DNA of 64,000 nucleotides from assembly GCA_033442325.1 (NCBI GenBank), contig JAWQFM010000001.1:1199473-1263472 (forward strand), read 5' to 3'. Below, in pieces: positions 22,401 through 24,514 of this stretch. Each line of letters starts with the position of its first letter. The stretch's first letter is position 1. The position numbers were made by a program, and so were the translations under genes. The DNA comes from Salpingoeca rosetta. Taxonomy: Eukaryota; Protista; Choanoflagellata. Below the pieces are notes generated by a model that did not search any database, had not been told where the DNA came from, and saw nothing but the letters and a program-made list of their open reading frames with translations.

Positions 22401-24514
22401 CTCATTCTCATCACTCATGACCACCATCTTCATCACTGATCATCATCACCACTACCACCACAATCACCACTGATGATCTGAAACGGCGCAGTGTCGGAAC
22501 AAGGCGATCAAGCACCTCGAGTACATGATCACCCCGCCCGATCCGCTGGCAACACATGTGGCCATTGCGTCCTTCACACAGCCTTCTTCGTCCTCCAGCC
22601 TGGCCTTCAAGGCAGGCGACTACATGCGGTGCGCTGACAGCACCGCCTCATGTGTGGCTTGACTTTCCTGACATGCCCTTCTTCGTTTGTTCGCAACGGG
22701 CTGAAGTCGTGCGTGAACGCTCTTTGCTCTCGCTCTCTTGCACAGCATGAACAGTTTGCACACACACACACACACACACACACACACACACACACACACA
22801 CACACACACACACACACACACACACACACACACACACAAAAAAAAAAAAAAAAGTATGCGGGCTCTCAAACTTACATGCGCGCACATTCGCGGACTCAAC
22901 CACATATGAACGGGCATCACAGAGTGACGTCGCAGGATCCTGGTGGCTGGCTGTTTGCACATATGGGGGATAAGCAGGGCTGGGTGCCCACCAACCACGT
23001 CAAGCACGTGTCGAAGGTCAACAAGGATGACGTACGTTTTGGCACATGCATACTCCCTTGAACACACCGGCCGTGCGTGCCAAGCTCCGTGCTGCACGCA
23101 TGCCGTTTTCGTTGTTTGTTGCCTTTTAGTTTTTGGCGAAGTCACCACATCTCTTCTCAAGCTCACAAAGTATCGGGTGTGTATCGGGCGCCTATCTACT
23201 CATGCACATGTGTGTGTGTGTGTGTTTGTGTATGTGTGTGTGTGTGTGTGTGTGTGTGTGTGTGTGTGTGTGTGTGTGTGTGCATGTGCGCTCCACAGTC
23301 CCTGGGTTCTCTGGAGGAACTGCTGCTTGAGGATCAGCTGTCCACCCTCAGATCAGCATTGGCAAACCTCGAGTGAGTGCATGGGCATAGGCGTTGCATG
23401 TGTACCGGGGCAAAACCGTGGCACGGTGCTCCCGCCACTGTTGGCTCAATGCTGTCTTCCACATGTCTCACTCATCGCCTCTTGTGGTATCAATTTCCAT
23501 CTCTCCAACAGCAACTACACGGGTGGATGGCTATCGGCTGCTCGTCGTGCCCTCATCGTAAGAGTTGCGAATCAAATGTGATGGCGACTACGTTTCTACA
23601 TGCTTCTGCCAGTCCTGTCGCGCCTTACCTGACACACACACACACACACACACACACACACACACACACACAACACTACTACACGCACACACACACACAC
23701 ACACACACACACACACACACACACACACACACACACACACACACACAGGCGCTTGACCGCACGCCCGGGGCGCGCGTTGTGGTGATGAGTTCATCCCAGC
23801 TCAGTCCCACACTGGCAAAGCTGATGCTGTTTGACCTCCATGCATTCGTTGACGCGGGCAACATCTACAGCTCCATCAAACACGGTGCGCATCGTGCATA
23901 TGCTTCGTGCACGTGCTCATATGTGTGGACGTAAAGTCTTCGTGTGCGTACTTGAATGTGCGTGTGTATGTGCGTGTGTGTGTGTGTGTGTGTGTTTGGC
24001 TTCTTGCTATTGCTTGACGCAGGCTGTGGTTGTGCGTTCTGTACACGCTCCCCTCCGCATTGTTGCCCTCACCTCCGCGTGTCTTTTGTCACGATGATGA
24101 TGTTTTTGGTGCTCAGACAAAGCACACCTGCTTGGGCAGATTCGTGAGCGCTTTGGCGATGACAAGACCTACACCGTCATCGCCGCAGGGTGAGCTGTGC
24201 TGTATGTAATGCTTCAAACTGCACTTGGTCGTGGGCACTGACATGGTACGCGAGTGCTGACAGTGAGTGTTGCTTTCCCGATGACCAACTCACTCACGCA
24301 CACACACACACACACACACATACACACACATGTACATGATGTACGATATGTGCGTCCACCCGTCGATTATGCTGTTTCCTGCTGTTGTTGCAGGGAGAAA
24401 GAGCGGGAGGCCAGCAAGGCCGCCAACATGCGCTTCCACCACGTGCAGGCGCTGCCTGATGTGCTTTCGCTCATGCGTCGCGCAGAGCTGTTGATTGGCG
24501 AAAAGTCGCAATAA
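19409..24514 (+). CDS. EYA: Eyes absent (EYA) HAD-family homologue with N-terminal SH3, polyQ linker and a second SH3 inserted in the EYA domain
   Basis: Exons 19409-19521 and 19756- give an SH3 ([32 protein letters not shown]). EYA motifs: [14 protein letters not shown] (21231-), [79 protein letters not shown] junctions through the EYA domain keep the frame. Confidence 0.9.
21337..21474. repeat. (TTG)n followed by (TG)n, intronic in EYA
   Basis: Direct reading. Confidence 0.95.

What the first reader, a model, noticed from the sequence alone, without database searches (positions are those of the whole stretch)
22492..23031. SH3 domain inserted inside the Eyes absent phosphatase domain
Seen: between [11 protein letters not shown] and [14 protein letters not shown], two in-frame GT-AG exons (22492-22628, 22923-23031) encode [82 protein letters not shown], a complete SH3. 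Established: this position corresponds to the YKNN/VGGLL region of the EYA helical cap, which is uninterrupted in animal and plant EYA, and those proteins have no SH3. The insert is bounded by phase-0 introns on both sides, so it is a symmetric, skippable cassette. Inference: exon-shuffled substrate-targeting module and possible isoform switch.
Basis: partly seen in the sequence, partly recalled or inferred. Interest (0 to 1): 0.85.

Follow-up and report, generated by a model that had tools for sequence, protein, structure and literature searches.

The report
SH3 domain nested inside EYA phosphatase
A choanoflagellate version of the developmental phosphatase Eyes absent carries a complete, expressed SH3 protein-docking domain spliced into a surface loop of its catalytic domain, an arrangement not seen in any animal EYA examined and not mentioned in the literature searched.

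Summary
Exons 22492-22628 and 22923-23031 are canonical GT-AG exons. Stranded RNA-seq reads and transcript contigs from three studies splice them into the EYA mRNA. No skipping junction was reported, and read depth over them is at least as high as over neighbouring exons.

The 82 encoded residues pass Pfam's SH3 thresholds over the whole profile (36.2 and 32.7 bits). They fold as a five-stranded barrel whose 50 best PDB matches are all SH3 domains.

With the 82 residues removed, the EYA domain aligns colinearly with animal EYA. The cut lies in the three-residue KNN loop between two helices of the cap. Sixty-six comparison EYA sequences (nearly all animal) have 38-48 residues between the flanking anchors; this protein has 119.

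The gene (653 aa, 16 exons) also has an N-terminal SH3, a polyQ and PxxP-rich linker, and AAG in place of the motif IV GDG. The genome is a choanoflagellate.

One environmental relative has a phase-0 intron at the same site with no detectable SH3, which fits exon shuffling. The isoform-switch idea is unsupported, and substrate targeting remains an inference. Orthologues in other choanoflagellates could not be retrieved.

The scan holds two sister notes on this same gene and none on other DNA.

The parts
19409..24514 (+). Whole gene: 16 coding exons, 653 aa. Architecture: N-terminal SH3, polyQ/PxxP linker, then an EYA (HAD) domain carrying a nested SH3.
   Evidence: In-frame GT-AG model. Exons from 21620 to 23557 are confirmed by RNA junctions. 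EYA identity rests on PDB EYA2, E 4.7e-5 on one exon, on TIGR01658 hits for three exons, and on a local animal-EYA profile at 137-143 bits.
22148..22226 (+). Exon D: end of the cap helix (...[11 protein letters not shown]), the last EYA residues before the insert. It ends in phase 0.
22492..22628 (+). Insert exon 1: a 22-residue leader predicted to be disordered, which holds a PxxP motif (ITPPDP), followed by the N-terminal half of the SH3. It ends in phase 2.
   Evidence: Junction reads at both ends. Pfam on the spliced insert. AF2 gives pLDDT below 50 for residues 1-23 of the insert.
22629..22922 (+). Phase-2 intron inside the SH3, containing a (CA)n microsatellite.
   Evidence: A skip of 294 nt with GT..AG ends, seen in 19 reads and 2 contigs.
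22923..23031 (+). Insert exon 2: the C-terminal half of the SH3 (...[20 protein letters not shown]...) plus the short linker SKVNKDD. It ends in phase 0.
   Evidence: This exon alone scores SH3_2 at 20.2 bits, E 4.9e-4. Junctions and contigs.
23299..23372 (+). Exon G: the cap helix resumes (SLGSLEELL...), aligned with animal VGGLL...
21247..21261 (+). HAD motif I, DLDET (nucleophile Asp and acid/base Asp), intact.
24182..24189 (+). Motif IV position: Ala-Ala-Gly (the Gly codon is completed at 24394) where animal EYA has Gly-Asp-Gly. The Mg-binding Asp is absent.
   Evidence: Alignments. The role of this Asp is taken from PMC8069645.
19409..19521 (+). First exon: start codon and the N-terminal half of a second, canonical SH3. 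The domain is completed by 19756-19828.
   Evidence: SH3_1 at 28.6 bits on exon 1 alone, above the 22.9 cut-off. Model.

Best explanation
The two exons encode a folded SH3 domain that is constitutively built into the EYA catalytic domain.

Shown: the SH3 is nested in the three-residue loop (animal KNN) between two helices of the seven-helix cap. A 22-residue leader predicted to be flexible and a 7-residue tail tether it. It can therefore stick out of the cap without breaking the HAD fold.

Inferred: together with the N-terminal SH3, it works as a docking site for proline-rich motifs. It would either bring partners or substrates to the cap-core cleft where the active site lies, or bind the protein's own PxxP motifs (ITPPDP in the leader, RPSTPPPLP in the linker) to regulate access.

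Partly supported: the module probably arose when a two-exon SH3 unit landed in a pre-existing phase-0 intron.
For: Expression and constitutive inclusion:
- Junction reads, contigs from three studies, and depth at least that of the neighbouring exons.

SH3 identity:
- SH3_2 scores 36.2 bits (cut-off 21.8) over profile 3-53 of 55. SH3_1 scores 32.7 bits (cut-off 22.9) over 2-48 of 48.
- The best PDB relative is the first SH3 of p47phox, E 1.5e-9.
- The AF2 model has five strands in SH3 order.
- All 50 top Foldseek matches are SH3 domains, with TM up to 0.79 and rmsd 1.7-2.1 A.

Nested position:
- With the insert deleted, the domain aligns colinearly to animal EYA at 34% identity.
- An animal-EYA profile gives two half hits with the insert and one continuous hit without it.
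- The site is the loop 142-144 between helices 121-141 and 145-149 in a confident model of mouse EYA4 ED.
- Anchor spacing is 119 residues here against 38-48 in 66 comparison EYA sequences, nearly all animal.

Ligand groove:
- The Trp and Pro of the SH3 binding surface are kept (alignment).
- Ten PxxP motifs occur in the same protein.

Role of the cap:
- HAD caps form the substrate cleft and set specificity (PMC8069645).

Origin:
- Relative L001 has a phase-0 intron at the same site with no SH3.
Against: - No ligand or substrate is known, and nothing here tests binding.
- The AF2 model of the insert is single-sequence with only moderate confidence (mean pLDDT 58; 57-75 in the core).
- Two aromatic groove positions differ from the canonical motif (AIASF for ALYDY, NH for NY).
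- The motif IV Asp is replaced by Ala, so there may be no catalysis to target.
- The geometry of the SH3 relative to the active site was not modelled, because the spliced 350-residue domain has no reference that could be handed to the fold tool.
- Conservation in other choanoflagellates is unknown, and the one related locus lacks the SH3.
Confidence: 0.55

Rival explanations
1. Adaptor or pseudophosphatase. The EYA domain has lost or weakened catalysis because motif IV reads AAG instead of GDG. The protein then works mainly as a two-SH3 scaffold, and the nested SH3 adds a binding valence rather than targeting substrates.
For: The Asp to Ala change at the Mg-coordinating position appears in two independent alignments. 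The review states that motif IV acidic residues coordinate Mg and that motif IV is 'less conserved' in choanoflagellate EYAs. Two SH3 domains plus many PxxP motifs and polyQ resemble an adaptor.
Against: Motif I (DLDET), the motif II Ser and the motif III Lys are all kept. A Glu two or three residues downstream (GEKE) might substitute as the metal ligand. That degree of conservation in a dead enzyme would be unexpected. No assay was run.
Confidence: 0.3
2. Regulated cassette. The 246-nt, phase 0/0 pair of exons is skipped in some life stage, switching between an SH3-bearing and a plain EYA.
For: Skipping both exons keeps the frame and restores an uninterrupted EYA domain.
Against: No 22226>23299 joint was reported in two raw RNA runs or in contigs of two other studies, and exon depth shows no dip. 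Two caveats apply. The reporting threshold was 3 reads and 10%. The neighbouring 23031>23299 joint was itself not tabulated for raw reads because a repeat next to exon G was masked, so a minor isoform could be missed. One loose-end row was also not shown.
Confidence: 0.08
3. Neutral, lineage-specific passenger. An SH3 module landed in a tolerant loop and persists without a specific role.
For: One relative lacks it at the same intron. The loop is at the surface, and loop length varies slightly among EYAs.
Against: The open frame is intact, the codon-position GC pattern matches the rest of the gene, Pfam scores are full-length, the core Trp and Pro are kept, and inclusion is constitutive.
Confidence: 0.07

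Closest known systems
Animal Eyes absent (EYA1-4, Drosophila Eya): HAD-family protein tyrosine phosphatase and transcription co-activator
   Same: The EYA domain is colinear, at 34% identity to mouse EYA4. Motifs I, II and III are present, and a helical cap lies between motif I and motif II.
   Different: An 82-residue SH3 is nested in the cap loop. An N-terminal SH3 and polyQ replace the P/S/T-rich transactivation region. Motif IV has Asp replaced by Ala. The score against an animal profile is only about 140 bits, compared with 375 bits for mouse on TIGR01658.
Choanoflagellate EYA domains as described in the literature (PMC8069645 Fig. 5; PMC4083861 citing its ref. 13)
   Same: Same lineage and the same domain. 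The reported weak conservation of motif IV is seen here too.
   Different: Those papers describe an ED plus a P/S/T-rich region. The review has no occurrence of 'SH3', and neither domain insertion nor an N-terminal SH3 is mentioned.
SH3 domains of p47phox (NCF1) and Tks4/5 (SH3PXD2), and of myosin I and beta-PIX
   Same: These are the closest sequence and fold relatives of the insert: 1wlp E 1.5e-9, 2ega, 5xg9, 5sxp. The similarity to p47phox extends into the pre-SH3 leader.
   Different: Those are terminal or tandem SH3s in adaptor or motor proteins, not domains nested inside an enzyme fold. No PX domain is present here.
Phosphotyrosine phosphatases with built-in docking modules (SH2-containing SHP1/2) and nested-domain proteins (PLC-gamma split PH, syntrophin PH-PDZ)
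   Same: Same logic: a peptide-recognition module is fused to, or inserted in, a signalling enzyme. (From general knowledge, not tested here.)
   Different: The catalytic fold differs (Cys-based PTP against HAD), the module differs, and in SHP the module is N-terminal rather than nested in a cap.

Membership tests
EYA domain (HAD phosphatase) | Motif I DxDxT, with nucleophile and acid/base Asp | tested here: met
   DLDET at 21247-21261, aligned to EYA2 and EYA4.
EYA domain (HAD phosphatase) | Motif II Ser/Thr and motif III Lys | tested here: met
   SSSQL is aligned with TTTQL, and HDK with IGK.
EYA domain (HAD phosphatase) | Motif IV acidic residues (GDGxEE), with the Asp that binds Mg | tested here: not met
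   AAGEKE is aligned with GDGVEE. The Asp is Ala, and one downstream Glu is kept. Role of the Asp from PMC8069645.
EYA domain (HAD phosphatase) | Helical cap between motifs I and II, colinear with animal EYA | tested here: met
   A single continuous hit to profile positions 8-280 once the insert is removed. Alignment.
EYA domain (HAD phosphatase) | Reaches the curated TIGR01658 cut-off of 195 bits | tested here: inconclusive
   Only single exons could be given by reference: 23.6, 14.8 and 27.3 bits, colinear. A local animal profile gives 137-143 bits, so the cut-off may not be reached.
EYA domain (HAD phosphatase) | Tyrosine phosphatase activity; SIX binding | not testable with these tools
   Needs biochemistry.
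SH3 domain | Full-length match above Pfam gathering scores | tested here: met
   SH3_2 at 36.2 against 21.8; SH3_1 at 32.7 against 22.9; both cover the whole profile.
SH3 domain | Five-stranded beta-barrel fold | tested here: met
   AF2 strands at 23-28, 44-51, 55-60, 63-68 and 72-78. The top 50 PDB matches are all SH3. Model confidence is moderate.
SH3 domain | Conserved ligand-groove residues (ALYDY tyrosines, Trp, Pro, Tyr of NY) | tested here: inconclusive
   Trp (GGW) and Pro (WVP) are kept. ALYDY reads AIASF, as in p47phox AIADY. NY reads NH.
SH3 domain | Binds proline-rich peptides | not testable with these tools
   Needs binding assays.
Alternatively spliced cassette | Frame-preserving on skipping | tested here: met
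   137 + 109 = 246 nt, phase 0 on both sides.
Alternatively spliced cassette | Skipping junction present in RNA | tested here: not met
   No 22226>23299 joint in four runs. The threshold was 3 reads and 10%, and masking next to exon G limits sensitivity.
Exon shuffling into an intron | A homologous gene has an intron at the same site and phase without the module | tested here: met
   L001: donor after ...EQYTK at 956, acceptor before VGRHL at 1461, both phase 0. No SH3 in any forward frame. This is one environmental contig, with no RNA support.
Exon shuffling into an intron | Donor gene identified | not tested
   Only the 64-kb window was available. The nearest SH3s by sequence are of the p47phox/Tks type.

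The most novel reading that the evidence does not exclude
A choanoflagellate independently invented a modular phosphotyrosine phosphatase. It placed an SH3 in the specificity-determining cap of the HAD-type EYA enzyme and added a second SH3 at the N-terminus. Proline-motif docking, or autoinhibition by the protein's own PxxP motifs, would then gate the active-site cleft. This would be a HAD-fold counterpart of the SH2-regulated SHP phosphatases, and a natural test of how the EYA cap controls substrate choice.
Probability: 0.2. Interest if true: 0.75.

Novelty: new variant of a known kind. Interest (0 to 1): 0.52.

Why it matters
EYA is the only HAD-fold protein tyrosine phosphatase and a core member of the animal Pax-Six-Eya-Dach network. 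How it chooses substrates, and what its cap contributes, are stated open questions (PMC8069645). So is whether pre-animal EYAs were active phosphatases.

Here a close unicellular relative of animals shows an EYA whose cap carries a ready-made docking domain and whose metal-binding motif is altered. The architecture is simple to test: delete 246 nt in frame, mutate the SH3 Trp, or restore the motif IV Asp. The assembly is probably the genetically tractable Salpingoeca rosetta (assembly identity from memory).

The finding also adds a clean example of domain insertion by exon shuffling to the known taste of choanoflagellates for unusual phosphotyrosine-signalling architectures.

Tried and rejected
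I laid the part beside it. Exons 1-5 and 9-11 of the EYA part therefore have no read check, although loose ends match exons A and I.

2. The representative search with the motif I exon did not return the window's own protein. It gave only exon-sized fragments.

3. Search with EYA fragment P0002 returned animal EYAs only.

4. Search with the 82-residue insert found no candidate of 45-143 aa. This says nothing about longer proteins.

5. Alignments of an animal EYA or of an unrelated long protein with the window's exons (A1, A3) were chopped-up piles. I did not use them as queries.

6. The metagenome scan with a motif I alignment returned 80 loci. All spliced ones are animal EYAs, 50-83% identical to mouse, and none has SH3 similarity.

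7. L083 is AT-rich and animal-like, so it was irrelevant.

8. L001's 69-codon AG..GT open frame between its exon D and G counterparts looked SH3-like by eye. It has no similarity to the insert (z 0.27), no Pfam hit and no codon periodicity, so I rejected it as an SH3.

9. An exact look-up of a Helitron-like ORF, meant to see the public annotation of EYA, was not on record.

10. Steps left out because the spliced 653-aa protein has no reference and must not be typed: a full-length homologue search, the Pfam/TIGR01658 score of the whole domain, and a structure prediction of the EYA domain with its SH3. The 82-residue insert was typed because it spans a splice junction.

Full report
**Observation.** Each stretch is preceded by AG and followed by GT. 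The first starts in phase 0 and ends after two bases of a codon; the second supplies the third base and ends in phase 0. Together they add 246 nt, or 82 codons.

I extended the model to the whole gene. It has sixteen GT-AG exons from the ATG at 19409 to the stop at 24512-24514 and encodes 653 residues.

**RNA evidence.** I therefore laid 21460-23600.
- In two stranded raw-read RNA runs, junction 22226>22492 has 11 and 5 reads.
- Junction 22628>22923 has 10 and 9 reads.
- Transcript contigs from two other studies run exon D, E, F, G and H without interruption.
- A loose-end consensus at 23031 reads straight into exon G.
- Depth over the two exons (16-30 in one run, 5-8 in the other) is at least that of the neighbouring exons.
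- No joint from 22226 to 23299 was listed.

Two caveats apply. The listing threshold is 3 reads and 10%. The 23031>23299 joint was itself not tabulated for raw reads, because a masked repeat abuts exon G. A rare skipping isoform therefore cannot be excluded, but the main mRNA includes the cassette.

**Is it an SH3?** Exon F alone matches the C-terminal half of Pfam SH3_2 (20.2 bits, E 4.9e-4).
- They score 36.2 bits on SH3_2 (cut-off 21.8, profile 3-53 of 55) and 32.7 bits on SH3_1 (cut-off 22.9, profile 2-48 of 48).
- Against the PDB the best relative is the first SH3 of p47phox (E 1.5e-9). The similarity runs into the leader. GRB2, myosin I, beta-PIX and Tks4 SH3s follow.
- A single-sequence AlphaFold2 model is only moderately confident (mean pLDDT 58; 57-75 across residues 23-78). 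It shows five strands in SH3 order after a 22-residue disordered leader.
- All 50 best Foldseek matches in the PDB are SH3 domains, with target TM up to 0.79 and rmsd 1.7-2.1 A over 57-60 residues.
- The Trp and Pro of the ligand groove are kept. The ALYDY motif reads AIASF, close to p47phox AIADY, and NY reads NH.
- The insert also resembles the gene's own N-terminal SH3 (Smith-Waterman z 6.3). At about a quarter identity it is no recent copy of it.

**Where does it sit?** With residues 423-504 removed, the rest aligns colinearly with animal EYA domains at 34% identity. The cut falls at ...SLYDE^SLGSL..., opposite animal ...YKNN^VGGLL....
- A profile built from 26 animal EYA domains sees the full protein as two half hits (profile 8-99 with residues 308-399, and 154-280 with residues 515-644). 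It sees the insert-deleted protein as one hit, profile 8-280.
- In a confident AlphaFold2 model of the mouse EYA4 domain, helix 121-141 ends at ...NTY. Residues 142-144 (KNN) are a loop, and the next helix starts at V145.
- The review PMC8069645 describes this part as a seven-helix cap. Together with the core, the cap forms the substrate site, and caps set specificity in HAD enzymes.
- Between the anchors [FY]RY.. and [TS]D.WL, 66 comparison EYA sequences (nearly all animal) have 38-48 residues (39 in 60 of them). This protein has 119.
- None of the stored animal proteins or the 80 metagenome loci shows any SH3 similarity inside the domain.

**The rest of the protein.**
- Residues 1-62 are a canonical SH3 (SH3_1 at 28.6 bits on exon 1 alone).
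- A polyQ and proline-rich linker follows. The protein has ten PxxP motifs, including RPSTPPPLP in the linker and ITPPDP in the insert's leader.
- Motif I (DLDET), the motif II Ser and the motif III Lys are present.
- Motif IV reads AAG where animals have GDG, so the Mg-binding Asp is missing.
- The review had already noted that motif IV is less conserved in two choanoflagellate EYAs. It never mentions an SH3.
- Three exons hit the dedicated TIGR01658 EYA model colinearly. The 195-bit cut-off could not be tested on pieces.

**Lineage.** An intronless PH-TIPE gene in the window is identical to an annotated protein on a 2.68-Mb scaffold of NCBI assembly GCA_000188695.1. Its nearest named relatives are Microstomoeca roanoka and Barroeca monosierra, and M. 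roanoka is classed under Choanoflagellata, Salpingoecidae. From memory this assembly is Salpingoeca rosetta. That identification is not a tool result.

**Relatives.** The only close EYA relative I could reach is L001, a 2.45-kb environmental contig with 68% identity in the motif I exon.
- It has recognisable counterparts of exons A, B, C, D, G, H and I.
- Its exon D counterpart ends at 956 and its exon G counterpart starts at 1461, both in phase 0. An intron therefore lies at the same place as the window's cassette.
- An open 69-codon AG..GT stretch inside that intron looked SH3-like by eye. It has no similarity to the insert (z 0.27), no Pfam hit and no codon-position GC pattern.
- No forward-frame piece of the interval gives any SH3 signal.

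This fits insertion of a two-exon SH3 module into a pre-existing phase-0 intron. It rests on one unannotated contig without RNA data. Orthologues from named choanoflagellates could not be fetched. The length filter of the word-index search needs a long query. The spliced protein has no reference.

**How it most likely works.** Shown: a folded SH3 is constitutively present in a surface loop of the EYA cap, on tethers predicted to be flexible, in a protein that also has an N-terminal SH3 and many PxxP motifs.

Inferred: it docks proline-rich partners next to the cap-core cleft, or binds the protein's own PxxP motifs to regulate the enzyme. Because the motif IV Asp is lost, an adaptor or pseudophosphatase role is a serious rival. 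A regulated cassette and a neutral passenger are less likely.

**Literature and novelty.** Full-text searches for EYA with SH3 and choanoflagellates found nothing. The papers that mention choanoflagellate EYA describe an ED plus a P/S/T-rich region. The gene lies in a public, annotated genome, so the sequence is not new, but the nested architecture appears undescribed. I rate it a new variant of a known kind, of moderate interest. An unchecked first-reader note reports five SH3 domains inserted in a class II PI3K of the same genome, which hints that SH3 insertion may recur there.

Noticed in passing
window 19409-19521 and 19756-19828: A second, canonical SH3 at the very N-terminus of the same protein. 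It is followed by a long polyQ tract (to about 20110) and a proline-rich linker, in place of the animal P/S/T transactivation region.
   Followed up: partly
window 24182-24189 plus 24394: HAD motif IV reads Ala-Ala-Gly where animal EYA has Gly-Asp-Gly. Motifs I to III are intact, so the protein may have weak or no catalysis.
   Followed up: partly
window 22531-22542 (protein residues 436-441): A PxxP motif (ITPPDP) lies in the leader just before the nested SH3, and RPSTPPPLP lies in the linker (residues 240-249). These are candidate intramolecular ligands.
   Followed up: no
window 24546-24556 and about 24876-25279: A likely two-exon small gene starts only 32 nt after the EYA stop codon (ATGCTCGCAAG|gt, then an acceptor after ...acgtag). 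It encodes a roughly 138-aa protein with one hydrophobic helix.
   Followed up: no
window 18412-19092, minus strand: The first exon of a VPS13/chorein-like gene (MTSYVKHQIAKKL...) lies head to head with EYA, 317 bp between the two start codons. This may be a shared bidirectional promoter.
   Followed up: no
window 9382-11946: An 852-aa open frame with a CCHC knuckle and a Helitron_like_N domain (63 bits). Its product is not on record in the public annotation.
   Followed up: partly
window 21337-21457, 22756-22838, 23196-23290, 23636-23748, 24560-24870: Many introns and the 3' flank of this gene carry long (CA)n/(GT)n or (TTG)n microsatellites. The related contig L001 shows the same habit.
   Followed up: no
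window 23005-23176: A low-depth contig in one run (X4, depth 4) runs from exon F into the following intron. It is unspliced precursor or a trace of DNA.
   Followed up: no
L001 1121-1327: A 69-codon open frame with AG..GT in phase 0 lies inside the intron that corresponds to the SH3 site. It is not SH3-like and has no coding periodicity. It is probably chance, but a different insert is not excluded.
   Followed up: yes
window 60734-61954, minus strand: The intronless PH plus TNFAIP8 (TIPE) protein is annotated as such (P0128). It has 59-67% identical relatives in Microstomoeca roanoka and Barroeca monosierra, so the fusion is shared among these choanoflagellates.
   Followed up: partly
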